From the NCBI GenBank assembly GCA_002269645.1, contig NIVC01001095.1, positions 186,001-250,000 on the forward strand: a DNA stretch of 64,000 nucleotides, read 5' to 3'. A model generated the notes under the pieces. That model was not told the origin of the DNA, ran no database searches, and saw only the letters and a program-made list of their open reading frames with translations. This document shows, one piece after another, positions 23,600 to 48,698 of this stretch; the stretch's first letter is position 1, and every line of letters begins with the position of its first letter. Position numbers and translations under genes: made by a program. The stretch comes from Macrostomum lignano (lineage: Eukaryota).

Positions 23600-24204
23600 C
23601 ATACATGCGCAACCTCCGAAATTCAGTCGGCCATGCGACTTAGTTTTAACAAAAATGTGACATAGTTTTTGGCCAAAAATGCAACTTACATGTAAAAAAA
23701 CCCTAAAGCAAAATTAACGCAATTTGGGTAAATGGCAGGAGTAACTATGACTGTCTTATAAGGCAAAAATGTCTCATCAGCTACTTAGTACTACTACTTG
23801 GGTTTTTTCGGGTGGGCATTTTTGCGACTTCCTTGGTTGGCCACCAAATCGGTCGGCCGGATCGGCCGACTCGGCTAACTGTTGCACATGTATGTATAGC
23901 AACATACATGTGCAACCTCCAAAATTCGGTCAGCCGTGCGACTTAGTTTTAACAAAAATGCGACGTAGTTTTTGGCCAAAAATGCGACTTACATATAAAA
24001 AAACCCGAAAGCAAAATTAACGCAACTTTGGGTAAACGGCAGGAGTAACTATAACTATATGTTTTATTAAGCTAAAATGCCTCGTCAGCTACTTAGTACT
24101 ACTCTTTAGGTTATTTTTTGGGTGGGCATTTTTGCGACTTCCTTGATTGGCCGCCAAATCGGTCGGCCGGATCGGCCGACTCGGCCGACTGTTGCGCATG
24201 TATG
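23600..24204 (+). mobile_element. Head-to-tail dimer of the same hAT-type MITE (23600-23894, 23903-24204)
   Basis: The 8-mer TATAGCAA occurs at 23592-23599, 23895-23902 and 24205-24212. Each monomer has CATACATG(C/T)GCAAC TIRs. Confidence 0.88.
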
Positions 24205-25830
24205 TATAGCAATATAGAATAGCACAAACACAAAATGTAAAAAATAAAGATATACAGTACTATAGGACCTAATACCATATTGAGCTTTATAAAATTTGCA
24301 CAAATATTTAGTTGTGCTATGCTGTGTCTTTTGAGACATAGTAACTGTATCTATCATCTAAAAACTTATAAGAAATAATAGCCACATCTCTAATAGTGAC
24401 TAGGTCCATACTTATAGACATAGCCAGGTGCTATGCAATGCATGCATATAACATTAGAACATTTAGACATGGTGTCCATGTCTATACAATATAGAATGTA
24501 GCAAAAATCAACATTTTTTCAAGTAAACAATGTGTTTTTCATGATACTATACATTGTCAAGTTTATTTTGAACAGAAAATGAGTAGATTAGAAGTGAATA
24601 AAAACAATTTTTTTGAGGTATAAATTTAATAAATATTTTAAGTAATTTGTTAGTCTATAAATTGAGAGGCAAAGTCCAAGGATAGATTGATAGCAATATA
24701 GCTAACAATACAGAATTTATAGCCAGTGCCCCCTCCCTCAGAACACATGGAGAACATAGCTTTGGGTGCAACCTAGGGATTCACCTGGCTGTTTCTTTTG
24801 ACAACACACACATGTAAGTTGCTATTGGACAGAATAATAGTCACTTGACTACTCTCAGCCAATAGCAACTTACATGTATGTGTTGCCAATAGAAATGGCT
24901 GAGTGATTCCCAAGGTTGCGAACTTTGGAAAGCAAAATTCCTGCAAGCAAAGTTTGGCAGGCAAAATTCAGCAAGCATTCATGAATTGGGGTATGAAGGA
25001 TCGATCACCCTACTTACGACGGCCTTAGGGCCTACTAAAGTCTACTACTACAGCCCAGGCTATACGTATCGAAAAGCTCTAGTCCGATTGTCCCTGATTT
25101 GTCCTTATGAACTACGACCAAGCCTTGCTGGAATGAACTTTCGAAATATTATTATTCTTAAGGTCAGGTCAGGACATCAAAGGCTACTCTTTGAGTCGCC
25201 AAATTTTACCTCAAGATTTTAGTTAGCACTTGACAATCACAGCACTTTTCGTTCTGTTTTGATAAGATGTATTGGTTTCCCGACAGACATTCAGACAGAC
25301 ATTCAGAAATCGTTCATTAAATGTTTAACAAAATTGTCTATTTATTACGCAAGATACTGTGAATTTATAGAAACTTTTACGCATGTCTCTGCTTTAAAAA
25401 GACACCTCAGACACACACAAAGACGCTTCACAAGCTGAGATATTCCTTAGCAACTGTTGTTACGACGTTTCCCAATATACCGAATACTGTATATAGTAGT
25501 TTTTTGAGAAGCTGCTACATCGTCCCACTTTGATCTTTCTGCATGAAATTTGCACAGCTGTTGCCCCCAGGACCCCGGGTCCTGCACGTAATGGCGTGGT
25601 GAACTATCTGTGCAGTATGAGACTGGTATGGCCTTTATCCCAGCCAGCGATGCTCACACCTGCCTCCCCTGGCGGGCTGATAGCTCAAGAGACTCTGTCT
25701 CCTGATTTTCACCTTGCAAGGCGCACTTCGAAGGGTACTCGTCCCGTGGGTGTTAAGGCAGGCCCCCTTGGGCCCTGCCGAGCTGATTCGTTGGCGCCGG
25801 GTCCTGGTGTGACCATAAACGCACCCTCTA

Positions 25831-27546
25831 ATGTCCCAGTGTAACTCCGTGCTGATGGACGCTTGGCCAGGGAGTAGTCTGGTCGCTAACGGTTCCCCTT
25901 GCGCTTTTGGGCCCCCCGCAGGGTGGTATTTTGCTTTTTGGGGGCCTGCCGCTTGGTTTGGGGTTGCGGCCTTGCGGCTCTTTGCCTGTGTTCTGCAGGA
26001 AGTCCCACCTTTTTACTTCCAGCCAATGGCTTCTAACCGAAGTAACAAACCGGCTGTGGATGACACAGTGCCTCCGGCCTCGGCTGGGGCCGTGGACTCC
26101 TCGGCCATACCACCTGCTACCATCGGGGACGCCTCGGCGAGACCCGTGGAGCCAACTCTGAGCGGTGCCTCCGAGAAGACACCTGCTACTCCAGCTGCTA
26201 AGAAACGCAGCACCACCTCTGGAGCTGCCCGCCGTCGACTTAACAAGGCGAGGCGGGCCAAGGAGGGCGGAAGCCAAACCGGTGCCAGGGGCCAACGGCC
26301 CGCGGCAGCGGAAGCTTCCCAGTCTGGGGCGGTGGCGGAAGAGGGCCTCGAGCCCACGGAAGCCCCTGCCCAGGATAGGGAGGCCGATGCAGCCGGGAGG
26401 GTGGACAGCCCACCTGAAGAAAGCTCCACTGACCCCCGGGCCTCCTACGCTGATGCGGCAAAGAGGCAACCGGCGGTTGTCATCCTGGGAAAGGACGCGC
26501 GCCTGTCTCCCGATCAGCTGAAGCAGGTGAGAAGTGCCGTTGATGGCCTCCTGTGGAAGCAAACTCTGAAGGGCACGCCTCTGAACATTCATTCGAATGC
26601 GACGAGGGACTCGTGCCTTCTCATTTGGCCCAGTGATGCTGACTCGGGTCGGCGGCTCCTTGAGCTGCTGCCCGAGCAGAGCTGGGACCTCAACCTAGCC
26701 TTCTGCAGAGAGGACGAGCGCCCCCGGACCAAGAGGCATCGAATCTGGGTCCCGGCCAGGAGCGTTGTTACCTCTGCTGACGAGCTCCGGAAAGGACTGC
26801 TAGCAGTCAACCGGGAGCTTCCCGCCGCGGGCCTAGTGGTGCATGACACCCTTAAGCGCACCGACGGCACTGGCTTCACAGCCATCCTGGGGCTGTCGGA
26901 CGCCTGGATGAGGCGTTATCCACACGGCAGCTTCATCAACGTCGGCCTTTGGAAGCTGCGCATCCGCTCCTACGAGGCCGACCCTCCCCGTGGCAGTGAG
27001 CAGGGCGGGCGGGATGCGGAGGCGGCCGGGGCCGAGGCGCAAGCCTCTGCTCAGACTGCCAAAGCAAACCGCCCTGCCCGGCAGCACGGCCGCGCGGGCA
27101 AAGCTGAGCGCGCTGCTGAGGGCGGAGGCGACCGACGCCCGGCGCGTAGCACCAAGCGGCGCGGCCTGTACCAGCGTGCAGCTGAGGCAGTCCGTACCGC
27201 CAAAATCTCCCAGCTGAGGCGAGAGGTCGCCGGGACGCCTAGGCGCACCAGTTCGTCCAGGGAGGGTGGGGACGTCCCAGCTGGGCCCAACCCCTCGGGG
27301 CAGGGCCGACTGGAGACGGACCCGCCTGCCCAGGCGGCTGGCTGCTCCAGGGCATTGGGCCAATCTGAGGCGGAGGACCCCATGGATGGTGGGCAAAGGG
27401 CGGCGAACGCTGCCTACTGCCTTCCGGCCAATCGGGGGCCTTTTGCTGAAGAAGAGCCCATGGACACCGGCGACCCCGACCCGAAGCCGGTGAGCGCCGA
27501 GGAGGAGGAGGAACTCCTGGCGGCTGCAACATCCGATCTGCAATGA
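25831..27546 (+). CDS. ORF1 (gag-like) of the non-LTR element; likely start MASNRSNK at 26027
   Basis: SYADAAKR motif and a RHRIWVP..RKGLLAVN segment resembling LOA/Lian ORF1. Its stop overlaps the ORF2 ATG (ATGA). Confidence 0.8.
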   Translation: MSQCNSVLMDAWPGSSLVANGSPCAFGPPAGWYFAFWGPAAWFGVAALRLFACVLQEVPPFYFQPMASNRSNKPAVDDTVPPASAGAVDSSAIPPATIGDASARPVEPTLSGASEKTPATPAAKKRSTTSGAARRRLNKARRAKEGGSQTGARGQRPAAAEASQSGAVAEEGLEPTEAPAQDREADAAGRVDSPPEESSTDPRASYADAAKRQPAVVILGKDARLSPDQLKQVRSAVDGLLWKQTLKGTPLNIHSNATRDSCLLIWPSDADSGRRLLELLPEQSWDLNLAFCREDERPRTKRHRIWVPARSVVTSADELRKGLLAVNRELPAAGLVVHDTLKRTDGTGFTAILGLSDAWMRRYPHGSFINVGLWKLRIRSYEADPPRGSEQGGRDAEAAGAEAQASAQTAKANRPARQHGRAGKAERAAEGGGDRRPARSTKRRGLYQRAAEAVRTAKISQLRREVAGTPRRTSSSREGGDVPAGPNPSGQGRLETDPPAQAAGCSRALGQSEAEDPMDGGQRAANAAYCLPANRGPFAEEEPMDTGDPDPKPVSAEEEEELLAAATSDLQ

Positions 27547-30500
27547 TGCCAACGACTACCTGGTGTCTGCAGATCAACACCCAGCACTGCGTGGCGGCGT
27601 CGGTCAACCTGATGCGCACGGCAGAGCAACAGCTTCCGGGCCTGGTCTTCGTACAGGAGCCCTGGATGACTAAAGGTAAGCCAAATAATGTGCCATCTGG
27701 CTACCACTGTTTTTGCATGGCGGGCTCTCAGCCTCGCCCAAGATCTCTGGTCTTTGCTGCAAAAGCTTTTGAGGCATGGATGAGACCTGATCTCTCGACT
27801 GGGGACATCTGTGTTGTTCAAATCAATAACCTCATTCCCAATAAACCTGTGCTGGTAGCTTCTGCCTATTTCCCGGGCGATGCCCCAGTTGTCTGCGACG
27901 CGTTAGTCAACCTTACTGACTATGCTGCGTCCCATCGGTTCGAGCTGCTCATTGCAGGGGATGTGAACGCACACCACCTGCATTGGGGCAGCAAGAACAT
28001 CAATAGCAGAGGCGAGGAGCTGCTGGCCTATGTCAGCAGCACTAACCTCAACTTCTGTAACGTGGGCAATGCACCAACGTTCAATAATGGGCGGTGGGCC
28101 GAAGTCATCGACACCACCATCGCCTCACCCGGACTGCTTTCCGCAGTTACGGGCTGGCGAGTGTGGGACGAGGACTCGCTCTCGGACCACCGCTTTATCC
28201 GCTTTTGCATTGGGCCGACCAAGCAAAAGCCTAAGGTCACTTGGAGTCGGAACGTCAGAAACACCGATTGGGCCGCCTTTGGCTCGAAGCTGAGCCGCGG
28301 CCTTCGGGATCTTGACCCCCCCAGTGACCTCTCTGACTGCCAGGTGGTGGACGATCTCGCCTCCTCCCTGGGCGGGGCGATCACCACTGCCTTTGAAGCA
28401 GCCTGCCCCCTAAAGGCCTATAAAGGCAAGAAATCTGCTCCCTGGTGGAACCCAGAGCTCGGGGCCCTTCGGCGCCGAGCCAGGACCCTCCAAAGGCGAG
28501 CGCTCAAAACCAAAGACCCATCTGACAGAGAGGCCTATACCCGTGCGATCCACGAGTTTAAGGGCCAAGTCAGAAGGGCCAAGACGGCCAAGTGGCGCCA
28601 ATATTGCGAAGGGCTTGAGGGCTCTCGCCCCGTAGCCCGCGTGGTTAAGGCACTCACTAATGACCGTTTTTCTAAACTCTCTGTTGTGAAGAGACCTGAC
28701 GGCTCGGTCACAGAGAGTTCGGAAGAGACTCTAGAGCTCATGCTCAACAGTTTTTTCCCTAAATCTCCGACTCAGCAGGGCCCGCCCGACCACACAGTGG
28801 GAGGGCAAGGCCTAGCAAAGTCTATGATCACCAAAGACCGCATTATTAGAGCGGCAAGGTCCTTTAACCCGTTCAAGGCGCCTGGGCCCGACGGCATCTA
28901 CCCAGCGTTCTTGCACGAGGCGGTGAAAAACCACCGCTTCCTGGACCTGCTCTGTCGTCTCCTTCGAGCTTGTATGGAGCTGGGCTATGTACCAGTTGCA
29001 TGGAGAGAGGCCCGGGTGGTCTTTATCCCCAAGCCTGGAAAGAGCGACTACCAATCGGTGAAGGCCTTCAGGCCTATCAGCCTCACTTCTTTCTGCCTCA
29101 AGCTCCTCGAGAGACTGGTGCTTTGGCGCCTACTTTCGGTCGAGCTGAAGCGCTTCCCACTCTCGCAGAACCAGCACGCCTTCCGCGCGGGCAGGTCAAC
29201 CGAGAGTGCTCTCCATGTCATTGTTGACTTCCTGGAGAGGGCCGTTCTTGGCAGCGGCTTTGCCCTCTCGCTTTTCCTGGACATTGAGGGGGCCTTCGAC
29301 AACGTCATCTTCGAGGCCTTTTGCAGAGCCCTGGAATCCAGGGCCACGCACCCTCACCTTGTCCGGTGGATCATGTTCATGATCCGAAACCGCACTGTTG
29401 TGGCCCACCTGAGCGGCAGCTCTCTTTCGGTGCCTGTCCTGAAAGGGGGCCCCCAGGGCGGCGTTCTCACCCCCGTTCTCTGGAACATGGTCATGGATGA
29501 GTTGCTTTGCAGTGATCTCCACGACCCCATTCTCAAGGTGGGCTATGCCGATGATGTGACCGCGATATGCGCGGGCCCCTCGGTTGATACCATCAGAGAC
29601 CTTCTGCAGGGCTTTCTGGGACGAGCGGAGCGTTGGGCAGACCAATGTGGCCTTAGACTCTCAGAGTCGAAAACCACAGCAGTCATGTTTACCAACAAAC
29701 TGCTCTGGACCATTAAGCCCCTCACCCTCTATGGAAAGAATATTTCCATGGAGAAGCAGGTCCGCTGCCTGGGCCTCACTCTGGACCACAGGCTTAACTG
29801 GACTCCGCACATTCAAACTAAAGCCAAAAAAGCCCTGGCTGTACTGGCTCAGATCAGGCGCGCCGTGGGCACCACCTGGGGGCTCACCCCCAGGAAGCTG
29901 TGGTGGATTTACACTGCCATCATCCGCCCCTCGATCAGTTACGCCAGCCTCGTGTGGGCTAGCGGCCTGAGCGTCAAGAGCAACCTCGACGCTCTCTACA
30001 AAATCCAGGGCAGAGCCTGCCGCATGACTATGGGCGCTCCACCCTCTACTCCTTTTGAAGGCATGAATGCCTTCCTCTGCGCCCCTCCTTTGGATATTTA
30101 TATCAAAGGAGAGGCGGCGAAGAGCACCCGGCGTCTTCTGGATGCTGGGTGGCCTTCAAGAAAGTGCGGGCCTTTAAGAAGCGGTCGCTTATCCCGCACT
30201 CTGACCTCTGCCTCAAGGCTCTCGAGGAGTGTGGCGGGCTCAACATCCTCACGGACTCGATCCCAGCCACCCTTCTCCTGAGCCAAAGGTATAAGGTCAC
30301 CATTCAGCCTCGACACGAGGCGAGTGACAGCTGGAGCGACTCTGAAGTCCACTGTTACACTGACGGCTCTATGAGGCATGGTCTTTCAGGCTTCGGAGCT
30401 TGCGTCTTCTTCAAGGGAGAAGTGGTGTGGAGCTACTCCCAGCACACTGGGCTCAACTCCAGTGTTTTTCAGAGCGAGGTGCTTGCCATCAGCTCCTGCG

Positions 30501-31246
30501 CGGCAGAGCTGCGCCGAAGGCAGCTTAGCGGCCGGAAATTTATTTTTCACTCTGACAGCCAAGCAGCCCTTCGGGCCCTCTGCCGCAGCACCGCCAGCTC
30601 CAGGTCCGTCCTGGACTGCAACACCCAGCTCAACGGGCTTGCGCTAGGCAACCAGGTGGAGCTCAGATGGATCCCGGGCCACGCCGGCTTCCTCGGCAAC
30701 GAGCGCGCTGACCTGCTGGCCAAGGCTGGCTCCGCCGGCGCGCTATTGGGGCCGGGCCCGGGTGCCCCCATCCCCGCCTCGGTGATCAATTCCCGCGTTA
30801 AGCGCTGGGCTGACTCCGAGCATCTCCGCAGGTGGCACGACACCCGGAATTGTAGGCAATCCCGTGCTGCCGTCCCCTGTCCCTCTCCTCTCCTGCGTAG
30901 AGCCCTCCTCAGGCTCAACCGCAGAGACCTCAGAGCAGTTAGCATGGCCCTCTCCGGGCATGGCTGCTTCTCTCGCCACCGCTTCCTTCAGGGCCAAGTA
31001 GCCGAGGAGCGGTGCCCCTTCTGCCGCTCAGGCAGTGAAAACGCCGAGCATTTTATCTGCCACTGCCCGGTTTTCACCAGGGCCAGGCTTACTCACCTCG
31101 GGCCAAACCCGGTTCTCTCCGACGTTTGCAGGCCCGAGAGCATCCCACTGCTCGCCCGGTACCTCAGGGACACCGGACGAGCTGATTTCTTCCCCACCGT
31201 CGGTGAGGAGGACCGCGCTGCAGGCGAGACCGACGGGTCCCCCTGA
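27543..31246 (+). CDS. ORF2: APE endonuclease, reverse transcriptase, RNase H, CCHC finger; one frameshift near 30150
   Basis: APE: LQINTQH, VQEPW, GDVNAHH, SLSDH. RT: KAPGPDG, GGPQGGVLTPVLWN, GYADD. RNase H: CYTDGS, SEVLAI, HSDSQAAL, WIPGHAG..GNERAD. Finger: CPFC..EHFICHC. Confidence 0.95.
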
Positions 31247-32392
31247 GCGACACCACTTCAACGGAAGTCGTTGGTCGCCAGGGGCTAGCGGAATGGGCGG
31301 TCTCCTCCGCCTCCTCGCTGCATCCGCCGGACGCCCCCTGCAGCTAAGTCAAGTAAGTCAAGTCAATTTGCACAGCTGTTTTACGCATGTCTATGCTTTA
31401 AAAAGACACCTCAGACACACACAAAGACGCTTCACAAGCTGAGATATTCCCTAGCAACTGTTGTTACGACGTTTCCCAATATACCGAATACTGTATATAG
31501 TAGTTTCTTGAGAAGCTGCTACATCGTCCCACTTTGATCTTTCTGCATGAAATTTGCACAGCTGTTTTACGCATGTCTCTGCTTTAAAAAGACACCTCAG
31601 ACACACACAAAGACGCTTCACAAGCTGAGATATTCCATAGCAACTGTTGTTACGACGTTTCCCAATATACCGAATACTGTATATAGTAGTTTTTTGAGAA
31701 GCTGCTACATCGTCCCACTTTGATCTTTCTGCATGAAATTTGCACAGCTGTTTTACGCATGTCTATGCTTTAAAAAGACACCTCAGACACACACAAAGAC
31801 GCTTCACAAGCTGAGATATTCCCTAGCAACTGTTGTTACGACGTTTCCCAATATACCGAATACTGTATATAGTAGTTTCTTGAGAAGCTGCTACATCGTC
31901 CCACTTTGATCTTTCTGTATGAAATTTGCACAGCTGTTTTACGCATGTCTCTGCTTTAAAAAGACACCTCAGACACACACAAAGATGCTTCACAAGCTGA
32001 GATATTCCCTAGCAACGGTTGCCTGAAGGCATGCTCATATCTAACTTGCATTTGGACACCGGCATGGAATGTACGTTATACTTGTATTTGCCTTCTACCG
32101 ATCTGAAGCACTTTACTTTAGGCAGATCTATCAGCAATATTAACACTGTACAGGAGGCAGTTTTTCTTTATGTACATTCGTTGTCATTTTGCCATGTACA
32201 TTACGCAAGAGGCCTAACACAGAATATGCCTGCACCCTGTTTTGGTATATAATCTTTCTCACTAACAAGCTCATTTTGACAATATGGATGAATTGTCTCT
32301 GCTGACTACAATATCTCTATCTTATATTGGCAAGAGTACAATAAGCACTAGCATATTTTGGTACTTAATTCATCTGACAGTTTTTTTTCGGC

Positions 32393-38300: not shown

Positions 38301-41300
38301 GTGGTCCATGGGCGTCTCCAGATTCCGAGACCCGCAGTCTTGGACATCATCAAGGAGGTCTACGTCAGCAGTGGCCTCCGAGGTTTTGTCCGGGCGAATC
38401 TCCAAGTAACGGCAGTCGGCGTGGGCGTCGCTGCGGAGGGCTGAGGTGTCAGTGGCCTCCGGGTTGGTGTCCAAACCGGTCTCCAGGCGTTGACTGCAGC
38501 GATGGTCGTCGTGCTGAAGGACTGCTGGCGCAGTGGCCTCCAGGTCTTCGGCCAGGGCAGTTTCGGCCTCCTTGTTGCGAGTGTGGACCTTCTTCGTGCG
38601 GGCTGCTCTCGCAGTGGCCTCACGTGTGGTGTCCAATTCCGGCTCCAGGCTGGTGTCATCACCGGGTCGGGCTGCAGAACCGGGGTGCTCCAGCAGTCGG
38701 CCATGTTCGAAGTCAACCGGTGGTGTCTCCGGGCGTCTTGACAGGGCGTCAGCGTTGGCGTGGTCCTTGCCTTTGCGATGGTGAAGCTGGAAGCGGAACT
38801 CGCTTAATCGCTCAATCCAACGGCCCAAGATGCCTGTGACCTGCGTCTGGTTCAGCAGCCACAGCAAGGCCCGATGGTCAGAACGAACTTCAAACTTCTT
38901 GCCGATTAAATAATGACGGAAATGTCGCATCGCGTCCACGATTGCAAGCAGCTCTTTCTTCGTGACCGTGTAGCGCTTCTCAGGATCACGAAGCTTCCGG
39001 CTAAAGAATGCAATTGGGCGCTCGACGCCGTCGGATTGCCGTTGTCCAAGACAAGCGCCTATGCGAATGTCTGAGGCATCCGTGTCTAGGACAAACTTCA
39101 CATTAGGATCTGAGTTAAACTCAGGCAGAGCGAGAACTTCAGTCGAACACAACTTCTTCTTCAACGTGTCGAACGCTACCTGGTGCTCATCAGTCCAATG
39201 CTGCCGCAGGCTGCCGATGTCCTTTCGAGTCAGGGCATGTAGCGGCGCAGCAAATCCAGCGTAGCCGTTGACAAACTTGTGGTAGTAATTGGCGAGGCCT
39301 AGGAATTGTCTCAGTTGAGTAACGGACTGTGGCACGGGCCAATCACGGATCTGCGCAATCTTGTCCTCACAGGTCTTCAGGCCGTCGGGAGTCACGACGT
39401 GGCCTAGATAATGCAGCTCCTTGAGGAACAAATGGCACTTCTTCGGCTTGACCTTGAGGTTGGCTGCGATAATCCGCTGGAGTACAGTCCGCAGGTTGTC
39501 CAGCTGCTCCTCGAAGGTCACAGAGTGCACCACGATGTCATCCATGTAGCCAAGCGCAGTCTTTGGCGTCAGGCCGTCCAGGAGCTTATTGATGCAACGC
39601 TGAAAGCTGCCTGGACTATCGTGGAGACCCATCGGTAGAACATTGAAACAGAATTGTCCGCGGTCAATCACAGAGAACGCCGTCAGGTGCTGATCGCAGT
39701 CGCGCAGCGGGATCTGCCAGAATCCTTGAGCGAGATCCAAGCTAGAGTACCACTGGGCACCACGCAGCTTCGCGAAGGTCTCCTGAATGTGCGGCAGCGG
39801 GTACGGGTGGTACACACACTTGTCGTTGAGAGCTCTGAAGTCATGCACCAGCCTGATGTTGCCGTCCTTCTTGGGCACTATCAGCATTGGCGAGTTGTAG
39901 CTAGAATAAGCCGGGCGAATGATGTGCTTCGCCAGCATCTCGTCTAGCAGGGCGTCTAGCTTGTCCTTCAGATGAGGCGGGATCCTGCGCGGTGGTAGCG
40001 CAACTGGTGTCCGATCCTTCAGGATGATCTCGTGGGTCACCAAGTGTGTCAGGCCAGCGTCTAGCAGATGCTTCGAGAAGGCTGCTTGACACTCAACTAG
40101 TAGATCTCGCACTCTCTGTCGTTGATCTTCGGACAGCTCGCTGTTGATCTCGACTTCCTCTAGCCAAGCTGTGCTGGACTCTTCAGGGCTCCTTGGCAAA
40201 TGTCGCACTTCAGGTTCCGGCGTCTCTTCCAGGTACATCAGGTCGGCAGTTCTAAGTGGTGTCGCAACCCAACGCGGATGCCCGACTGCAGGAACACCTC
40301 GCAGTCAGCAGTGTTGACGACCTCGATGTAGCCTCGACCTTCAGGCATCGTCATCAGAGCTGGAGCTGCTTCCAGAGTGTTGCAGCTGGGGTGCAGTCTC
40401 GACTTCACCAGCTCGACGATTGATGGCGATCCTCGGTTCTCGGGGTGGCCGACATCCAACTGGACGGCCAACAGCGCTGAGCTTCTCGGCGGCAGAGTGC
40501 ACTTCTCGGAGGTGTACACCCGGCATGATTGAAGCTCACGGCGCGAATAGCGAACGGGAATGCACGCGCCATTGTTGAACTTTAACATTCCTTGCGCAAA
40601 GTCCAAGTTTGGCAGTGTTCACGCATGAAATTAATACCAAGCAAATTTTCACAATCGGTGACCGTGACCAGGAATTCGGTGTCCGCGACGACATCACCAA
40701 CTCCACCGGGATGATCACCTTACACGCAAGGGGTAGCTGCGTACCGTCGTACATGGTCACGCAATCCGGGATAGCATGCGATATGATACAACGAGGCATC
40801 CGACGTCTAACATTGGCCCAGGTCGACGCTCCAAGAAAGTTTTTCCGACTGCCGCTGTCTAGTAGGAAAGGGACTTCTCGGCCCGCCAATCGGCCGGTGA
40901 CGTACGGATCAGCCTCACGCGCATGGATTTTTTGATCATCGGAGGTGTCCACGAAACCTCCGCACTCAGCCTCACTTACTGATGAGCGACTGTCGGACTG
41001 GGCATTGGCGTCTGCGCAGCCGACATCCTCTTCTTCTGGTGAGCGTTCGGAGTCTGCCAAGTAGCCGGGGCTTGGGCTCTGCGGAGGGCGTTGCCGTGGG
41101 CGCTCTCCGTCTCGCCGTTTCCCTGGTTCTGGCGTAACGGGCACTGTGCATTGCGATGACCAGGCTGACCACAGCCATAGCAGATCATGGCTTTCGCCGG
41201 CGGACTCGTTTTCTGCTGCTGGTCACGCTGCACCAGGTTGTCTAGCAGTCGCTGCTGTTTCTCTAGCAGATCAGTCAGAGCTAGGAGAGCTTGAGCGGTG

Positions 41301-43987
41301 GCGTCGGGCGTCGGGTCACCGTCGCGCTCCCCGTTCAGCATGCGAACCGGGGGTTGAGCAGAGCGCTGCGCCAGTTCCTTGGCGCCTTCCAGACGATGGA
41401 GTTCTCGAATAGCGGCCAGCAGATTGTTCGGGCGGACCCAATAGAGCCGCTCGCGCAGATCTGGTGTCGTCCTGATGCCAGCTAGGAACTGATCAGCCAG
41501 CTCCCGCTCTCGATCCTCAGGGTGCATTCGAGGGTACGCTCGCTCTCCCAAGGTGCGCAGGGCATCAGCGTACTCTTCTGCTGACTCATTCTTGCCTTGC
41601 TGACGGCGCCTCAGCAGCTCTCGATATTCATCCGCGCCACCGTGGCGGGCGAATCTCTCGATCAGTCGCTGCCTGACCTCCTCGTAGCCAGCATAGCGTG
41701 GGAGGTGCATACTGAGCAGAGCCGGGTAAGCGGTTGCCAGATCTAGACTCGCAACGAGGTGCTGCTTCATCTCGATCGGGTCTTCGATACGCTCCATCTC
41801 GCAGCGCTGCTCGAACGCGGCGAGCCAGACGTGGATGTCCTGGCTGGGCGTGTACTTTACAATCTTAACAGATTTGCTTACCGGCCGCTCCATCTGCTGC
41901 TGCAGAGCTGCCATCATCGTTCTCACATCCTGGGGCCTGATGTTCTGGCCGAGGTCGTCCAAACCTGGCAGAAGCTCGTCTGGCGGGTCTTCGGACACTT
42001 CGCTTCTCGCACTTCGCCGCGGCATCTGCTGACCAAGGTCGTTGACCGCTGCTGCTGCGGCAGCCGATGCTGCTGCAGGTCTCGAACTGCTGATGTGCTG
42101 ATCCAGCCGGCTGCTGCACCGGCTCTCTTCTCTCTCGTTAAACATTTCAAATTAGTAGAATAGCCGAATTCTTACTCGAAAGAGCGGTTGTCTTGGGTGT
42201 AGTAGTAGTCGAATCTTGACTTGTCGGATCCCAGATAGTCGTGTCGTTGACTCGTCGAATCCCACCGCTGCCACCAGTGAAGTACAGGTGTCTTGCCTGT
42301 GGTTGTCTAGAGGCCTTCAATAGGAACGCTGCCCCGGTGAAGTACAGTTGCTTGAGCTCCTCTGGGAAGTCTCCGGGTTGATCTAGTAGCGTTGGTAGTG
42401 CTGCCACCAGCTTCGCAGAGTCGCAGCCTTCGTGAGGTGCTGAGCTCGTAGAAGCAAATAACTAAGACGAGAGAAAGAGACTCGCACTTCGTGCAGATTT
42501 AGCAGTTCTCGCGCAGAGGTGCCCACCGTCAGCAGTCCCTGCCGGGCTGGTGCGGGGTGAGAGCGAAAGTGCTAGCTTCGGGCGATCTGAGCTGGCCTGC
42601 TAGCTGATAGCAGGAACAATCAGAGCCAGAGGCAGTCACGCGCAAAGTCGGGAGTCTTGGAGTTCAACTTAAGCGTCAACTTGGCACACAACTTAGAGTT
42701 CGCTAGAAACGAAACGGAAGGAACGCTAGGAAAGCTTGGAAAGCTAGGAACGCGAGGAACGGTAGGAACGCTGAAAACGCAGAAACGAGAGGCTGAAACG
42801 GAAGGGCCGGTTAACGGAAGGAAAGAAAGGCTTGTCTGAGCCAAGCCAGGAGAGGGGCTGCATTTATAGGGAGGATCGATTGCACCATAGCACGAAAGGC
42901 CCCCGCTGAGAGTCATAAGTGACTCTGTTGCTATTTTTAGCAACAAACAAGCGGGCCCTGCCTCAGAGGAGGCAAGGGGGGGTCCGGGCGCACGTGATCT
43001 CCCCATAAACACGAGCCCAGCGTACAATGATGAAATCATTGCACTTTGGACTAAAGAAGGAAGAGGGCCTTGTCATGTGACTGACTCACATGACAAGGGG
43101 AAAAGGCCCACAAGTGAAGGCACTCGTGACCGTGGGACCGGAAAACAGGAAGGCACTCCAAATTTGGAGATGCCTGACAGAGAACGAAACAGAGGCAGGC
43201 CAGACCAAGCTGTCTGGGCACTGCAAAAAGGGAAAGCGAGACAAAAGGGGCAAACGAGGACAAACAGACAGACAGACAAACGGGCAGAGGACAGGCCAGG
43301 GACAGGCGGGAGGGACAGGCAACTGCCCAGCGGCAGACAGAAACCTGGGGAGAAGGCGAGGGCAACAGCTGACTAGTGCGGCGCCTAACTAAACTAGCGA
43401 CTCACTACACTTACTACTGTTGACTTACTTCCCAGATCGACGATGCCGTCTCTCGGGCAAGGAAGGCGCACTCCATTCCTAAAGATTACCGAAATCGAGA
43501 TCCTATTTTCTCGTTTTTATGCTCGCGACTGGGAATGAGAAATAACTTAAGAAATCGTATGACTATGTGGAATTGGCTTCGGAAAGCCACATCTACATGT
43601 AGTACCCGATGTTCGCCCGGACAACCTCCTCATGAAGATGAGTCTTGTTTCCAACAGAACAGCAATTCTTTTAGACCTCATAGCTCCACTGAATATCAGC
43701 CAACCAGTGGCCATGCTGAAGCCCAGCCAGCAGCTGGCCAGGCGACCAACAATGAGAGAGCCGGAAGTCCTGAAGGGACTCCTGAAGGGACTCCTGAAGG
43801 GACTCCTGAAGGGACTCTTGAAGGGACTCCTGAAGGGCAACTTGTTATGGACTGCTCCTCAAGGAATGAAGTGACAGCGACAGTGACAATATCGATTAAC
43901 GCTATAAGGAAGATTAATTTACGAATCAATAATTCCAAGTATGTTTTTTCGAAGCCAGCACTAAATGAAGCTCTCTGCAAATCATAA
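32393..43987 (+). CDS. Predicted 3-exon gene for a ~242-aa secreted protein inside the foldback element (32393-32464, 32871-32975, 43436-43987)
   Basis: Exon 1 encodes MRLSICILALFLVTISMSFPTKEE (signal-peptide-like) followed by GTAAGC. Exon 2 (cacAG..GTAAGT, 105 nt) is open only in frame 0. Exon 3 follows tgacttacttcccAG in phase 0 and runs into ORF 43535..43987. AATAAA at 44004. No recognised homology. Confidence 0.62.
33222..34352 (-). repeat. 3' LTR (1131 bp)
   Basis: Near-identical to 42278-43409; TATAAA on the minus strand at 33806-33811; preceded by PPT GAACGGGGAGAG. Confidence 0.97.
34755..36050 (-). CDS. Post-integrase ORF (431 aa), probably a frameshifted C-terminal extension of Pol
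   Basis: Overlaps the end of the integrase ORF and begins with RPVRDRRPPERL, a typical Gypsy integrase tail motif. No signal peptide or TM segment. Confidence 0.65.
   Translation of the reverse strand: MQSPAPPPCTTQVEASPIPVVVGRPVRDRRPPERLLISDPRAKTYVSRTARMRVHKLKPCSAEMHKRPLHVSSSSSSDAEQGRPSRSRRRPGTPVSPETMGIPRRPLETINRRLRAEGNGSARPTRQVDRRPHRRTPSPEPQRRNGRPLRTSAPRRSPSPVLESHAAQHPARGQRHSPEVIDLTRDSPSPDATARTLMVDRIAAALAYVQLEQQVMRGLADIRLQVRNSLPDIDGARPAARERVGSEHHGRPGGTDERGGDLDDARHPDAAPSPMSWTDDTQGAAACSSAVWTDLAASLRRTLPRAPPPSPERPAETLDTGTQTESPIPEYRATVIAAGANLISAVLVRAARQGGEIVDLGGPIWAELRQTTAEERSRLFAEAVGLAGPDLERPNRPYALHLAAVRVARFMGGGEEDLPMLLMTPRLCYFD
35990..37516 (-). CDS. Integrase portion of Pol
   Basis: HHCC (HSSPLCGH..CRAC); DDE (VHCDVVGP, HTDQGTNF, NGQVENLN). 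Confidence 0.95.
   Translation of the reverse strand: MASSPEGCPAEALDAQVLQELHSSPLCGHLGQTKTLKRLRERFWRPGLARVTENFISKCRACLESKSRRRDRVPVQSFPVCEVLGRVHCDVVGPIAQKSKSGNRYILTLCDATSKYPFAYPMRNQKAKTVIKILQERLIPDFGVPCWIHTDQGTNFTGSAFKKFCDLFGIRHTTTTPYNPASNGQVENLNKQLKSVLTCLLERNHNDWDTFLPACLMALRSSVHPVTGFTPHYLVFGRDFRLPIDNAIKKLPEYANLPDYVKDFQRRLDEATELAKERLHLHQQLRDEHYSNLPAAKKLQPGDLVFLNNPVLEPDEAAKFHRPRKALYEVVEPKGEVVYKIRRRVPNPRARRDELVVHRRNLLLVPDADYQLTSDPEVDQAKKRCRLTDAPDGAGPATLTPIPEDDPDEDDDDDDAWPAFRWRFRPLAIPDVQPGGGPVTTPANQASAFRREPLPYGDRHDGVPGLNASAPAASFSPVHASPFPNLFRRCSLLRHLLAPLRWKRLPYQ
37395..40238 (-). CDS. Reverse transcriptase-RNase H portion of Pol with a long acidic spacer
   Basis: PYPLPHI, LDLAQGFWQI, LPMGL, YMDDIVV, LDTDASD, TKKELLAI, RSDHRAL, NADALSR. 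Confidence 0.95.
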   Translation of the reverse strand: MYLEETPEPEVRHLPRSPEESSTAWLEEVEINSELSEDQRQRVRDLLVECQAAFSKHLLDAGLTHLVTHEIILKDRTPVALPPRRIPPHLKDKLDALLDEMLAKHIIRPAYSSYNSPMLIVPKKDGNIRLVHDFRALNDKCVYHPYPLPHIQETFAKLRGAQWYSSLDLAQGFWQIPLRDCDQHLTAFSVIDRGQFCFNVLPMGLHDSPGSFQRCINKLLDGLTPKTALGYMDDIVVHSVTFEEQLDNLRTVLQRIIAANLKVKPKKCHLFLKELHYLGHVVTPDGLKTCEDKIAQIRDWPVPQSVTQLRQFLGLANYYHKFVNGYAGFAAPLHALTRKDIGSLRQHWTDEHQVAFDTLKKKLCSTEVLALPEFNSDPNVKFVLDTDASDIRIGACLGQRQSDGVERPIAFFSRKLRDPEKRYTVTKKELLAIVDAMRHFRHYLIGKKFEVRSDHRALLWLLNQTQVTGILGRWIERLSEFRFQLHHRKGKDHANADALSRRPETPPVDFEHGRLLEHPGSAARPGDDTSLEPELDTTREATARAARTKKVHTRNKEAETALAEDLEATAPAVLQHDDHRCSQRLETGLDTNPEATDTSALRSDAHADCRYLEIRPDKTSEATADVDLLDDVQDCGSRNLETPMDHDSEATEQAALLMTAHNANPDQQCKFNSPEFCAESSRRVDRGQTLATAARSTLCPPSRQTAAHRLCGKSSPPLRHRPVLEKTHPMTTMIEPTATAACDEACFTCCVSPYSQESPGLCSGGKCTAPAAEIPVKRATMRTSKRDQRSYADVVRQSPSERPNPDADKTESRDQLRATEAETEEIRNPQPCRAVLTDFLRMPMTRQQFVDAQRADRAISYVLNLVENKALKPEFDARLRLTKEQRNLLGYYDNLREDNGLLMIDLTDGQQPRRLSCRSSRCPGAPGAPQFATVWTPRPDEDVEAAT
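40238..41144 (-). CDS. Aspartic protease and linker of Pol, split by frame breaks (ORFs 40536..41144 and 40238..40606)
   Basis: VPFLLDSGS catalytic motif; ENLLGINFM flap-like motif in the intervening frame. Confidence 0.85.
40976..42145 (-). CDS. Gag (389 aa) with CCHC zinc knuckle
   Basis: CYGCGQPGHRNAQC; retrotransposon capsid-like region (RRQQGKNESAEEYADALR). Confidence 0.92.
   Translation of the reverse strand: MFNEREESRCSSRLDQHISSSRPAAASAAAAAAVNDLGQQMPRRSARSEVSEDPPDELLPGLDDLGQNIRPQDVRTMMAALQQQMERPVSKSVKIVKYTPSQDIHVWLAAFEQRCEMERIEDPIEMKQHLVASLDLATAYPALLSMHLPRYAGYEEVRQRLIERFARHGGADEYRELLRRRQQGKNESAEEYADALRTLGERAYPRMHPEDRERELADQFLAGIRTTPDLRERLYWVRPNNLLAAIRELHRLEGAKELAQRSAQPPVRMLNGERDGDPTPDATAQALLALTDLLEKQQRLLDNLVQRDQQQKTSPPAKAMICYGCGQPGHRNAQCPLRQNQGNGETESAHGNALRRAQAPATWQTPNAHQKKRMSAAQTPMPSPTVAHQ
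42255..42276 (-). other. Primer-binding site complementary to the 3' end of tRNA-Leu
   Basis: The plus strand reads tcgaatcccaccgctgccacca, the conserved 3' end of metazoan tRNA-Leu(AAG/TAG) plus CCA, 1 nt from the 5' LTR. Confidence 0.9.
42278..43409 (-). repeat. 5' LTR (1132 bp)
   Basis: The only difference from the 3' LTR seen by eye is a 1-bp indel (ggcacacaac vs ggcacaaac). Confidence 0.97.
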
Positions 43988-44184
43988 AATGCTGACTGTG
44001 TTGAATAAAGACAGGGACAATGCAGTTATCGCGGATCAAGTCGGACGTGATATTTATGGGGTGTTTTATGTTTCGTTGCACGAAATGTTTTGATGCTTAT
44101 TTTCTGTAGTTTGATTCTCAGTTGCTGACGGGATTACCCCATCCTGAGTCGATAACATTAATTCTGTTCGATTTTACTAATGTG

Positions 44185-44743
44185 CACTGTGCACTAATTT
44201 CATGCAGAAAGACCAAAGTGGGACGATGTAGCGGCTTCTCAAAAAACTACTATATACAGTATTCGGTATATTGGGAAACGTCGTAACAACAGTTGCTAGG
44301 GAATATCTCAGCTTGTGAAGCGTCTTTGTGTGTGTCTGAGGTGTCTTTTTAAAGCAGAGACATGCGTAAAACAGCTGTGCAAATTTCATGCAGAAAGATC
44401 AAAGTGGGACGATGTAGCAGCTTCTCAAAAAACTACTATATACAGTATTCGGTATATTGGGAAACGTCGTAACAACAGTTGCTATGGAATATCTCAGCTT
44501 GTGAAGCGTCTTTGTGTGTGTCTGAGGTGTCTTTTTAAAGCAGAGACATGCGTAAAACAGCTGTGCAAATTTCATGCAGAAAGATCAAAGTGGGACGATG
44601 TAGCAGCTTCTCAAAAAACTACTATATACAGTATTCGGTATATTGGGAAACGTCGTAACAACAGTTGCTAGGGAATATCTCAGCTTGTGAAGCGTCTTTG
44701 TGTGTGTCTGAGGTGTCTTTTTAAAGCAGAGACATGCGTAAAA
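44185..44743 (-). repeat. Right TIR 186-bp subrepeat array (3 copies, inverted)
   Basis: Unit ends at 44371, 44557 and 44743; reverse complement of the left array. Confidence 0.95.
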
Positions 44744-46280
44744 GTTTCTATAAATTCACAGTATCTTGCGTAATAAATAGACAATTTTGTTAAACATTTA
44801 ATGAACGATTTCTGAATGTCTGTCTGAATGTCTGTCGGGAAACCAATACATTTTGATAAGACACGTTTTGATAAGCAACATGCCGCGACTGCACTGCAAG
44901 TAACAGAGGCTACGGCAATGAATTTGATGAATTTCTTCTTTCGATGAAAGAAAGAAAGAAAAAAGTTTTTGAAAGTTATAACACAGTTAGTTGTTATACT
45001 ATAAGTTAACTATGTAAAAAATAAAAATTTGGTTGTCAAAATAAGTCATTTTGTTTTATAATATAATTTTTAGCTAAAAACTAAATATTATTATTATTTA
45101 CAGCGACATGATTTGGTTTCTTCATTTTTATGCATTTTAAATAATTAATGCTTTTATATACCGTGCATGCTACAGCGTAAAGTATGTAACTTGTAGTTAC
45201 ACAATATTAAGTTTATAAACTTCTACAGTTCTACTGTAGTACATGTAACGAGAAGCAATAAACTTTCTGAAATATATAATCTTACTATATGTGCCCTAAT
45301 CCTATTCAACAAAACTTGCTTTGCTTCACTGAGTACTGAGTAGCTGAGTAGCTATAATTTACAGGGGCGGCCCCAAAAATAGCTTGATAAAACATATTGC
45401 GACCCACTAAAACCTAAGTTTGCACACTTTAAGACTTTAAGCTTGATTTTTCGCCCCCCCCCTCCTACACGCATTTTTGCACCCTAGCTTAAAAATTGGC
45501 GCCCCTCATACTTATGTTGGCGCCCCAAACTATGACCGCCTTTCCCCAATTGAAATTCTAGATCCGCGTGTTCCGCCACTGGCTAGAATGACGAAGTGCA
45601 AAGGGCCTAACTCAGCTCATTAAGTACAGTTTATTTAGATTTATTTTAATCATTTTCAACCGCTATGGAAACGTTATAAAGACATTTTTATTTACAGTCT
45701 GTTAAACAGGTTTGATGTGTTGAAATGTACAACTGTTAGCTTTTTTCAGCTCTATACAAAATTCGCTTTATTTAGTTAGTACTTTTTATAATTTTTATGT
45801 ACATGTTTCACTTTGCAATAACTCAATTCAAAATTCAAAAATTCAATTCAATTCTAAAATTTTTTTTAAAAATCGCACGAAGGGCTATTGCAGTTCCAAA
45901 GTTAATTTTGTAAGCCATAAAATTTAAACTATACAATAGTTATATCACAGATTTTGGTGCAATTGTCCTTGTTGTCTGATATGAATTAAAAATGGAAAGA
46001 AGCAAAGTCGTGTAAGTTGAAATTAAAGTGTGCAAGGTTAAAAGAGTTTGAAAGGAGCATTAAGTGAGTGAAAATTTGATTCCTTATTTCTTTATGGGGT
46101 TTAAAATTTTATATTGTTATCATAGCTAGATTTCTCAAAAATTTGGAAATATAACTTATTGAAATACGAGTACTTTGTACTTTCAAAATAAAAAGAAACT
46201 CTTTAATGAGATATTCACTGCCCTCTGTCTGGCATGTTTTTATTCTTCAGTTATAAATTTTTCGACAGGCTGGCCTAGCT

Positions 46281-48640: not shown

Positions 48641-48698
48641 TTATGTTGGATAAGTTAATAAACAGTATTAATAACATTTATTTCCGCAGCTCTGAACA

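What the first reader, a model, noticed from the sequence alone, without database searches (positions are those of the whole stretch)
25267..44851. Foldback/Mutator-like element with modular TIRs that carries a gene rather than a transposase (Pack-type element in an animal)
What looks like two separate satellites 12 kb apart is one element. Its ~110-bp termini are exact inverted copies, followed by inverted 186-bp subrepeats in unequal number (4.4 vs 3). The same 9-bp (or 11-bp) sequence flanks both ends. Long subrepeat-built asymmetric TIRs with 9-11-bp TSDs are characteristic of Foldback/MULE elements. With the nested retroelements removed it is ~3.6 kb with a ~2-kb loop holding a spliced gene. 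Gene-carrying Pack-MULEs are established in plants; an intact secreted-protein cargo in an invertebrate would be unusual.
Basis: partly seen in the sequence, partly recalled or inferred. Interest (0 to 1): 0.85.

Follow-up and report, generated by a model that had tools for sequence, protein, structure and literature searches.

The report
Foldback-type DNA transposon in a flatworm
The two inverted 186-bp repeat arrays are the arms of one Foldback-type DNA transposon in the flatworm Macrostomum lignano, later invaded by two retroelements. It is a neat but ordinary example of a known kind, and its "cargo gene" is an unverified orphan reading frame.

Summary
Positions 25267-44851 are one inverted-repeat element. 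Each end has a 108-bp unique terminus, and the two ends are 100% identical over the outer 180 bp. Inverted 186-bp units follow, 4.46 on the left and 2.95 on the right. TTTGATAAG flanks both ends (9 bp, readable as up to 11).

Two insertions, each with its own target-site duplication, explain the 19.6-kb size:
- a LINE at 25563-31364 with a 16-bp duplication;
- a Ty3/gypsy element at 33222-43409 with a 4-bp duplication.

Without them the element is 3,575 bp with a 1,982-bp loop. LINE proteins 99-100% identical to a UniProt entry place the window in Macrostomum lignano.

The best reading is a non-autonomous Foldback-type class II element. The duplication length points to the Mutator/MULE superfamily. 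No transposase and no second copy could be examined, because the host genome is in none of the searchable collections.

The "cargo" is a 187-codon open frame (p≈0.003 against shuffles) with a plausible signal-peptide exon and GT-AG intron. It has no homologue, no domain and no identifiable parent gene, so gene capture is not shown.

Gene-carrying Foldback/MULE elements in invertebrates are already published (Ssk-FB4 in Drosophila, Tm1/Cg-1 in Meloidogyne, and 370 Pack-TIRs, transposons carrying captured host sequence, in 55 animal species). This is a new member of a known kind, of modest interest.

The parts
25258..25266 (.). Left copy of the putative target-site duplication TTTGATAAG (9 bp; 25257-25267 if read as 11 bp)
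   Evidence: an exact direct repeat abuts both termini. The 10-mer occurs only 3 times in the window, against 0.26 expected.
25267..25374 (+). Left unique terminal domain (108 bp). It includes the 12-bp subterminal direct repeat GACAGACATTCA x2.2 at 25282-25307.
   Evidence: a perfect inverted copy of 44744-44851. The terminal 31-mer is found only at these two places in the window.
25375..25562 (+). Left-arm 186-bp unit 1, up to the LINE insertion point
25563..31364 (+). Nested non-LTR retrotransposon (LINE). It has ORF1 (571 aa), ORF2 with endonuclease and reverse transcriptase (912 aa), an RNase H ORF in another frame, and a (TAAGTCAAG)n tail. It is flanked by the 16-bp duplication AATTTGCACAGCTGTT (25547-25562 and 31365-31380).
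   Evidence: It is 99-100% identical to Macrostomum lignano UniProt A0A1I8IXZ7.
31381..32021 (+). The rest of the left arm: 186-bp units 2-4 plus a partial unit of about 85 bp
32022..33221 (+). Loop, first part. It holds TATATAA at 32246-32252 and putative exon 1 at 32393-32464 (MRLSICILALFLVTISMSFPTKEE), followed by a GT donor at 32465. An inverted-repeat structure resembling a miniature transposon (MITE) lies at 32519-33170, inside the putative intron.
   Evidence: There is no Pfam hit in any frame.
33222..43409 (-). Nested Ty3/gypsy LTR retrotransposon. LTRs are at 33222-34352 and 42278-43409, with one gap in 1,134 aligned positions. TSD (target-site duplication) CTTA lies at 33218-33221 and 43410-43413. 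ORFs carry a gag zinc knuckle, RT/RNase H and integrase domains, plus an unassigned 431-aa ORF.
43414..44195 (+). Loop, second part. The acceptor AG is at 43434-43435 and putative exon 2 at 43436-43987, with the stop at 43985-43987. A 12-bp repeat (x5.8) encoding (PEGT)n lies at 43768-43837. AATAAA is at 44004-44009.
   Evidence: The open frame is 187 codons; 0.3% of 2,000 Markov shuffles reach that length. No homologues were found.
44196..44743 (-). Right arm: 2.95 inverted 186-bp units
44744..44851 (-). Right unique terminal domain (108 bp), with the mirrored 12-bp subterminal repeats at 44811-44836
44852..44860 (.). Right copy of the putative target-site duplication TTTGATAAG. A third TTTTGATAAG lies 5 bp further on, at 44866-44875.

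Best explanation
This is a single insertion of a non-autonomous Foldback-type class II (cut-and-paste) transposon in the Macrostomum lignano genome. It was originally about 3.6 kb.

**Shown.** Each end has a 108-bp unique terminal domain carrying two 12-bp subterminal direct repeats. A tandem array of 186-bp units follows, with a different unit count in each arm. A 9-11-bp direct repeat flanks the ends. No transposase lies inside. After insertion, a LINE landed in the left arm and a Ty3/gypsy element in the loop, each making its own target-site duplication.

**Inferred.**
- The element was mobilised in trans by a DDE (acidic catalytic triad) transposase encoded elsewhere. The duplication length points to the Mutator/MULE superfamily, which includes the Phantom and Foldback lineages.
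- That enzyme would bind the terminal and subterminal repeats and make 9-bp staggered cuts at the target.
- Unequal exchange or replication slippage changed the number of units. The shared variants of left units 2 and 4 suggest a two-unit duplication.
- The near-identity of the arms reflects youth, intra-element conversion, or both.

**The loop.** It carries a small two-exon open reading frame for a signal-peptide-bearing orphan protein. Whether this is a functional gene, a captured host gene or an element-borne or de novo ORF is not known. The gypsy insertion sits 22 nt upstream of its putative 3' splice site.
For: - Arm structure and identity.
- Flanking direct repeat and its rarity in the window. 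A 9-mer match at the two boundaries would arise by chance about 5e-6 of the time (own estimate from base composition, no tool call).
- The inner ends of the two arrays stop at different unit phases and have no matching flanks. This argues for one element rather than two.
- The nested elements have their own 16-bp and 4-bp duplications, so the arms and loop were once contiguous.
- No transposase domain lies in the loop or elsewhere in the window.
- Published properties match. MULE duplications are 8-11 bp and MULEs occur in Platyhelminthes (PMC6446971). FB4 has 9-10-bp duplications and about 700-bp inverted repeats (PMC8277862). Tm1 has variable tandem-repeat arms and 9-bp duplications (PMC3169594). 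Subterminal repeats raise transposase binding and excision in the foldback MULE Muta1 (PMC5499845).
- The ORF is longer than chance. Exon 2 is 46% GC, against 38% in the intron and 33-36% in the flanks.
Against: - Only one copy could be examined. No second copy lies in the window, and the host genome is in none of the searchable DNA collections. The metagenome scan gave only 19-20-bp matches that do not extend, read as chance. The viral and prokaryote scans found nothing.
- No autonomous partner or MULE transposase was seen, so the superfamily call rests on duplication length alone.
- An 8-bp duplication with one extra matching base cannot be excluded.
- A third TTTTGATAAG lies 5 bp downstream, so the target was locally repetitive. 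That slightly weakens the duplication argument.
- Foldback architecture is polyphyletic: it occurs in the P, MULE and Tc1 superfamilies (PMC3169594).
- The ORF has no homologue, no domain and no confident fold. Its third-position GC is 39%, against 66% in the neighbouring FAM76-like ORF.
Confidence: 0.68

Rival explanations
1. This is a Pack-type Foldback/MULE that captured an intact host gene for a secreted protein, and that gene is functional cargo moved by the element.
For: - The loop is flanked by arms plus a duplication and holds no transposase.
- It has a complete gene-like layout: TATATAA, an ATG with a hydrophobic signal-like exon, an in-phase GT...AG intron, a 184-codon exon and AATAAA 17 nt after the stop.
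- The ORF is longer than chance, p about 0.003.
- There is precedent for capture of a near-complete gene by a Foldback element: Ssk-FB4 (PMC8277862).
Against: - No parental gene or paralogue was found in the window, in 5.8 billion protein clusters that include M. lignano UniProt entries, or in 1.84 billion representatives searched with full HMMER. All hits fall on the PEGT repeat.
- There is no Pfam domain, and the structure model is useless at pLDDT (AlphaFold confidence) 42.
- Codon third-position GC is unlike the neighbouring host ORF.
- T-rich DNA readily yields hydrophobic 'signal peptides', and phase compatibility is a 1-in-3 event.
- A 10.2-kb antisense gypsy element now sits 22 nt from the acceptor.
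- No transcript data were available.
Confidence: 0.15
2. This is a Foldback-like non-autonomous transposon of a superfamily other than MULE. Candidates are the P/Galileo-like, hAT and Merlin superfamilies, or an undescribed one, that evolved long subrepeat arms independently.
For: - Foldback architecture has arisen independently in the P (Galileo), MULE (FARE, Tm1, Muta1) and Tc1/mariner (Mcmar) superfamilies (PMC3169594, PMC5499845).
- The true duplication could be 8 bp plus one chance match.
- No MULE transposase was seen.
- The terminal sequence ATGTATTGG resembles no MULE terminus I know (from memory, not tested).
Against: - The direct repeat is at least 9 bp as it stands and reads up to 11 bp.
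- Family duplication lengths below are from my own knowledge of the superfamilies.
- P/Galileo elements make 7-8 bp and hAT elements 8 bp.
- Tc1/mariner elements duplicate TA, and no TA, TTAA or 3-4-bp duplication is present at the ends.
- MULEs are documented in flatworms (Curupira, MuDR-4_SM; PMC6446971).
Confidence: 0.13
3. This is not a transposon. It is either a local inverted duplication of a satellite block, or two independent satellite-bearing insertions that happen to face each other around a host gene. On this view the flanking repeat comes from a pre-existing TTTTGATAAG microrepeat.
For: - A third TTTTGATAAG copy lies 5 bp beyond the right one, so the locus is locally repetitive.
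- The window is packed with more than 20 minisatellite arrays. Simple and tandem repeats make up 15% of this genome (PMC5730564).
- No second copy of the element was seen.
Against: - The identity ends sharply and at exactly the same base on both sides, and the direct repeat abuts both ends with zero spacing. The two downstream copies are 5 bp apart.
- An inverted duplication would not create direct flanking repeats.
- Two independent insertions would each need their own ends and duplications. The inner array ends have neither, and they stop at different unit phases.
- The terminus has subterminal direct repeats typical of transposase-binding ends.
- An assembly palindrome artefact is excluded by the unique 2-kb loop and the properly nested insertions.
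Confidence: 0.04

Closest known systems
Tm1 Mutator/Foldback family of root-knot nematodes, Tm1-HH elements carrying Cg-1 (Gross & Williamson 2011, PMC3169594)
   Same: Both are invertebrate non-autonomous elements. Both have composite inverted repeats made of a short terminal motif plus tandem repeats, with copy number differing between the arms of one element. Both have 9-bp duplications. Both loops give a spliced transcript or ORF without a transposase, and both carry nested insertions of other elements.
   Different: Tm1 subrepeats are about 14 bp, against 186 bp here. Tm1 has asymmetric 7-bp outer motifs. Tm1 has a known autonomous member with a Phantom-type MULE transposase and several copies with empty sites; none of this is available here. 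There is no sequence similarity.
Drosophila Foldback element FB4 and its gene-carrying derivative Ssk-FB4 (Tan et al. 2021, PMC8277862)
   Same: Both have long arms of about 700 bp built of subrepeats and 9-10-bp duplications. Both are non-autonomous. Ssk-FB4 carries a nearly complete host gene, including upstream sequence, between the arms.
   Different: Ssk-FB4 has an identified parent gene (Ssk), four insertion sites with distinct duplications, and evidence from RNA, protein and population data. Here there is one copy, no parent and no expression data. FB subrepeats are tens of bp long (from memory), not 186 bp.
Muta1 of Aedes aegypti, a 'type 2 foldback' MULE (Liu & Wessler 2017, PMC5499845)
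   Same: Muta1 has a terminal motif followed by subterminal tandem repeats, and those repeats increase transposase binding, cleavage and excision. This gives a tested mechanism for why such arms exist.
   Different: Muta1 is autonomous, has short subterminal repeats and a palindromic terminal motif (GGGTCTACCC). No such motif is present here.
Plant Pack-MULEs and animal Pack-TIRs (PMC8277862, PMC5861414)
   Same: All have inverted repeats plus a duplication around non-transposase sequence with gene-like features.
   Different: Pack elements are defined by an identifiable parental host sequence, and none was found here. Most carry gene fragments rather than a complete small gene.
Rehavkus group and flatworm MULEs (Curupira, MuDR-4_SM) (Dupeyron et al. 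2019, PMC6446971)
   Same: Rehavkus elements have 9-bp duplications, inverted repeats up to 400 bp and an associated minisatellite. MULE transposases are documented in Platyhelminthes.
   Different: Those groups are defined by their transposases. Curupira has no inverted repeats. No protein is available here for comparison.

Membership tests
Foldback-type elements (structural class) | Long terminal inverted repeats built of tandem subrepeats, often unequal in number between the two arms | tested here: met
   The left arm has 108 bp plus 4.46 units of 186 bp. The right arm has 108 bp plus 2.95 units. Identity is 98-100%.
Foldback-type elements (structural class) | Sharp ends flanked by a target-site duplication | tested here: met
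   TTTGATAAG abuts both termini. Caveat: a third copy lies 5 bp downstream.
Foldback-type elements (structural class) | Dispersed copies with different flanking duplications, or an empty site (mobility) | not testable with these tools
   No other copy lies in the window. The M. lignano genome is in none of the searchable DNA collections.
Mutator/MULE superfamily (including Phantom/FB) | Target-site duplication of 8-11 bp, typically 9 (PMC6446971) | tested here: met
   The direct repeat is 9 bp and reads as up to 11 bp.
Mutator/MULE superfamily (including Phantom/FB) | Termini shared with an autonomous element that encodes a MULE DDE transposase | not testable with these tools
   No MULE, SWIM or FLYWCH domain was found in the loop or in the window ORFs scanned. 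A genome-wide search was impossible.
Pack-MULE / Pack-TIR | Internal sequence derived from a host gene with a parental copy elsewhere | tested here: not met
   Only the PEGT low-complexity stretch finds matches in 5.8 billion clusters and 1.84 billion representatives, although M. lignano UniProt proteins are in the database. Nothing was found in the window. Limit: unannotated genomic copies could not be searched.
Pack-MULE / Pack-TIR | Inverted repeats plus duplication, with no transposase inside | tested here: met
P-superfamily foldback elements (Galileo type) | 7-8-bp target-site duplication (from my own knowledge) | tested here: not met
   The direct repeat is at least 9 bp. An 8-bp duplication plus one chance match cannot be strictly excluded.
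Tc1/mariner elements with long inverted repeats | TA target-site duplication | tested here: not met
   The flanks read ...GATAAG|ATG and CAT|TTTGAT..., with no TA duplication.
hAT superfamily | 8-bp duplication and YARNG termini (from memory) | tested here: not met
   The duplication is 9-11 bp and the terminus is ATGTATTGG.

The most novel reading that the evidence does not exclude
An active Foldback/MULE family in the regenerating flatworm Macrostomum lignano may have captured, or given birth to, a lineage-specific secreted-protein gene and be spreading it. If so, transposon-borne orphan genes, and satellite arrays seeded by Foldback arms, would contribute to this genome's unusual load of tandem repeats and orphan genes.
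Probability: 0.12. Interest if true: 0.55.

Novelty: new member of a known kind. Interest (0 to 1): 0.3.

Why it matters
If confirmed genome-wide, this would be the first Foldback-type family I could find described for Macrostomum lignano. No paper in the searchable library links the genus with MULE or Foldback elements.

It would also offer one concrete route by which this genome acquires dispersed blocks of satellite-like repeats. Simple and tandem repeats make up 15% of it (PMC5730564).

A recently inserted element with intact termini could hint at a live DNA transposase in a model organism where transgenesis tools are in demand.

The gene-carrying aspect would add one more case to a documented phenomenon (PMC8277862, PMC3169594). 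It would not open a new one.

Tried and rejected
- **Exact-protein look-ups.** I looked up the cargo ORF, LINE ORF2 and gypsy Pol in public assemblies to reach other genomic copies. None is on record.
- **Terminus in metagenomes.** A scan with the 19-nt terminus gave four hits that match only 19-20 nt. These are chance matches.
- **Other DNA collections.** Scans of viral contigs with part of the 186-bp unit, and of prokaryote genomes with the 27-nt terminus, found nothing.
- **Cargo homology.** The word-indexed search and the full HMMER search both hit only the PEGT repeat. Pfam found nothing. The single-sequence AlphaFold model had pLDDT 42, so no fold search was run.
- **Species from a host gene.** A search with the FAM76-like ORF returned nothing. 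The species came instead from the LINE proteins.
- **Terminus as a diverged unit.** I tested whether the 108-bp terminus is a diverged 186-bp unit. The alignment score is no better than shuffles.
- **RNA-gene origin of the unit.** Rfam and tRNA scans of the window found no hits, so an RNA-gene origin of the 186-bp unit has no support.
- **Rejected readings.**
  - Assembly palindrome artefact: rejected because of the unique loop and the nested insertions with their own duplications.
  - Two independent insertions: rejected because the inner ends lack termini and duplications.
  - DIRS or Polinton-type elements: rejected because the only coding capacity inside belongs to the two nested retroelements.
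- **Speculation only.** The pair TTTTGATAAG-ACACG-TTTTGATAAG on the right flank could be an old excision footprint at a reused site.

Full report
**1.

Tandem Repeats Finder reports two arrays of a 186-bp unit, at 31365-32021 (3.5 copies) and 44187-44743 (3.0 copies). The repeat finder shows they are inverted copies of each other at 98-99% identity. It also shows that a further piece of the same arm lies at 25255-25562, opposite 44556-44863.

Read base by base, the outer 180 bp of the two ends are identical. The first 108 bp (25267-25374 and 44744-44851) are unique sequence, and the units follow. The left arm has four full units plus about 85 bp. The right arm has two full units plus one of about 176 bp. 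Units are 98-100% alike.

Left units 2 and 4 share three variants. This suggests the left arm grew by a two-unit duplication (inference).

The terminal domain carries a 12-bp direct repeat, GACAGACATTCA x2.2, starting 15 bp from the tip, and it is mirrored at the other end.

**2. The flanks**

TTTGATAAG abuts both termini, at 25258-25266 and 44852-44860. One base on each side can be assigned either to the inverted repeat or to the flank.

The 10-mer TTTTGATAAG occurs only three times in 64 kb, against 0.26 expected, and none of 100 shuffles reached three. All three copies are at this element; the third is at 44866-44875.

The first two copies touch the termini with no spacer, while the second and third are 5 bp apart. 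The simplest pre-insertion sequence is ...TTCTG-TTTTGATAAG-ACACG-TTTTGATAAG-CAAC..., with the first copy duplicated on insertion. This is inference; an empty site was not available.

**3. Why the element is 19.6 kb**

The left arm is interrupted at 25563-31364 by a full-length LINE on the + strand.
- It has ORF1, and an ORF2 with endonuclease and reverse-transcriptase domains.
- An RNase H domain lies in a different frame.
- It ends in a (TAAGTCAAG)n tail.
- It is bounded by a 16-bp duplication of the unit sequence AATTTGCACAGCTGTT.

The loop contains a Ty3/gypsy element on the - strand at 33222-43409.
- Its 1,133-bp LTRs differ by a single gap.
- It is flanked by a CTTA duplication.
- Its ORFs carry a gag zinc knuckle, RT/RNase H and integrase domains.

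Removing both insertions and one copy of each duplication gives a 3,575-bp element with a 1,982-bp loop.

**4. Organism**

Pieces of the LINE ORFs are 99-100% identical to UniProt A0A1I8IXZ7 of Macrostomum lignano. The window's load of more than 20 minisatellite arrays and young LTR elements fits that genome, which is 21% LTR elements and 15% simple and tandem repeats (PMC5730564).

The element lies between a FAM76-like ORF pair (19.7-21.6 kb, - strand) and TMEM17-like ORFs (47.3-49.1 kb, + strand).

**5. What is in the loop**

No frame of the de-nested loop matches a transposase or any other Pfam family, even at E<=1. The element is therefore non-autonomous. The other window ORFs scanned gave ChaC, TMEM17, FAM76 and a mariner HTH remnant, but no MULE domain.

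The loop does hold a 187-codon open frame. Only 0.3% of 2,000 first-order Markov shuffles of the loop reach that length.

A gene model can be written:
- TATATAA at 32246;
- ATG at 32393, followed by 24 codons (MRLSICILALFLVTISMSFPTKEE) that look like a signal peptide;
- GTAAGC donor at 32465;
- a pyrimidine-rich acceptor ending in AG at 43435, in phase;
- 183 codons to a TAA at 43985;
- AATAAA at 44004.

Exon 2 is 46% GC, against 38% for the intron and 33-36% for the flanks. Its third-position GC is 39%, unlike the 66% of the neighbouring FAM76-like ORF.

The protein has no detectable relative. The word-indexed search of 5.8 billion clusters and the full HMMER search of 1.84 billion representatives return only matches to its (PEGT)n repeat. 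The first database does contain M. lignano UniProt proteins. There is no paralogue in the window. A single-sequence structure model is uninformative at pLDDT 42.

The frame is therefore probably coding, or was recently. That it is a functional gene is unproven, and that it was captured from the host is unsupported. The gypsy element sits 22 nt upstream of the putative acceptor and turns a 779-nt intron into one of about 11 kb.

**6. Mechanism**

The anatomy is that of a Foldback-type cut-and-paste element: unique ends with subterminal repeats, long arms of tandem units that differ in number, a duplication, and no transposase.

Foldback architecture has evolved in several superfamilies, namely P (Galileo), MULE (FARE, Tm1, Muta1) and Tc1/mariner (Mcmar) (PMC3169594, PMC5499845). 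Architecture alone therefore does not assign the family; the duplication length is the only discriminating feature available.
- MULE duplications are 8-11 bp (PMC6446971). Those of FB4 are 9-10 bp (PMC8277862) and those of Tm1 are 9 bp (PMC3169594).
- From my own knowledge, P and hAT elements make 7-8 bp and Tc1/mariner elements duplicate TA.
- MULE transposases exist in flatworms (Curupira, MuDR-4_SM; PMC6446971).

I therefore favour mobilisation in trans by a MULE-family DDE transposase that makes 9-bp staggered target cuts. The subterminal repeats, and perhaps the 186-bp repeats, would help transposase binding, as shown for Muta1 (PMC5499845). Every step after 'Foldback-type architecture with a 9-11-bp flanking repeat' is inference.

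**7. Rivals**

- **Another superfamily.** This remains possible if the true duplication is 8 bp.
- **A non-transposon origin.** An inverted duplication, or two facing insertions, fits poorly. Both ends are sharp at the same base. The flanking repeats are direct and abut the ends. The inner array ends have no termini or duplications of their own.
- **An assembly palindrome.** The unique loop and the properly nested insertions exclude this.

**8. What could not be tested**

The host genome is in none of the DNA collections available. Exact-protein look-ups found no record. A metagenome scan with the terminus gave four 19-20-nt chance matches with no extension. Viral and prokaryote scans found nothing.

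Copy number, other duplications, empty sites, the autonomous partner and transcription all remain open.

**9. Comparison with what is known, and novelty**

The closest published analogues are these:
- Tm1 in Meloidogyne has tandem-repeat arms of variable length and 9-bp duplications. The spliced Cg-1 transcript lies inside a non-autonomous member (PMC3169594).
- Ssk-FB4 in Drosophila is a Foldback element carrying an almost complete host gene. It was reported together with 370 Pack-TIRs in 55 animal species (PMC8277862).

Two things differ here. The subrepeat is 186 bp rather than 10-30 bp. The host is one for which I found no published Foldback or MULE description.

**10. Verdict**

The feature is real and accurately described. 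Its classification as a Foldback-type, probably MULE-mobilised, non-autonomous element is reasonable but rests on one copy. The Pack-type claim is not supported by present evidence. It is a new member of a known kind, of modest interest.

Noticed in passing
window 22519-24207: A second, older inverted arrangement about 1 kb upstream. One unit of about 290 bp (22519-22807) faces two tandem inverted units (23600-23897 and 23903-24207) at 78-80% identity, around an AT-rich spacer of about 800 bp. The unit itself has inverted ends (ATACATACATGCACAAC...). No clear duplication is visible. It is either a MITE cluster or a decayed foldback-like element.
   Followed up: partly
window 32519-33170: A MITE-like inverted repeat lies inside the putative intron of the loop ORF. 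Its arms are about 74 nt at 86% identity, about 510 bp apart. No clear duplication is visible.
   Followed up: partly
window 49962-50391 and 24768-24919: Two further small palindromic structures. The first has nested arm pairs of 83 nt (87%) and 77 nt (79%) across about 430 bp. The second has 61-nt arms at 84% identity with a 30-nt spacer.
   Followed up: no
window 19753-21566 (- strand): Two intronless ORFs match the N- and C-terminal parts of Pfam FAM76. They are separated by a 23-bp minisatellite (20706-20995), and the C-terminal ORF has polyQ and polyA tracts. The word-indexed protein search with the N-terminal part found no relative at all. This may be a fast-evolving copy or a retrocopy.
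   Followed up: partly
window 5035-9412 (- strand): Three ORFs match consecutive parts of the ChaC-like family (gamma-glutamylcyclotransferase). This looks like a host gene whose introns hold large minisatellites (6286-7501 and 8436-8961).
   Followed up: no
window 47333-47722 and 48696-49133 (+ strand): Two ORFs each match nearly the whole Transmemb_17 (TMEM17) profile. This is an apparent tandem duplication, separated by a (TCTG)n tract and a 20-bp minisatellite.
   Followed up: no
window 51016-51264 (- strand): An ORF matches the Mos1-type transposase HTH_48 domain. This is a mariner remnant next to a 23-bp minisatellite (51515-52150).
   Followed up: no
window 52793-52921: An interstitial tract of degenerate GGGTTA (TTAGGG-type telomeric) repeats, about 21 copies.
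   Followed up: no
window 54479-58217: An 18-bp unit is repeated about 208 times at 94% matches. It creates ORFs of up to 1,186 codons in several frames on both strands, which are artefacts of the repeat. Overall the window holds more than 20 distinct minisatellite arrays.
   Followed up: no
window 30149-30281: In the nested LINE, the RT ORF (27543-30281) and the RNase H ORF (30149-31246) overlap in different frames. Relatives encode a single protein of about 1,220 aa, and UniProt A0A1I8IXZ7 reads straight through the junction. This copy therefore has a frameshift or a sequencing error there.
   Followed up: partly
window 34755-36050 (- strand): The nested Ty3/gypsy element has an extra 431-aa ORF downstream of integrase with no Pfam match. 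It could be an env-like third ORF. The gag, RT/RNase H and integrase parts lie in separate overlapping frames.
   Followed up: no
UniProt A0A1I8IXZ7 (P0009): This M. lignano database protein is a chimeric gene model. It has a signal-peptide and repeat-containing N-terminus (FGKRGYAR repeats, neuropeptide-precursor-like) joined to pieces of the LINE ORF2 and RNase H.
   Followed up: no
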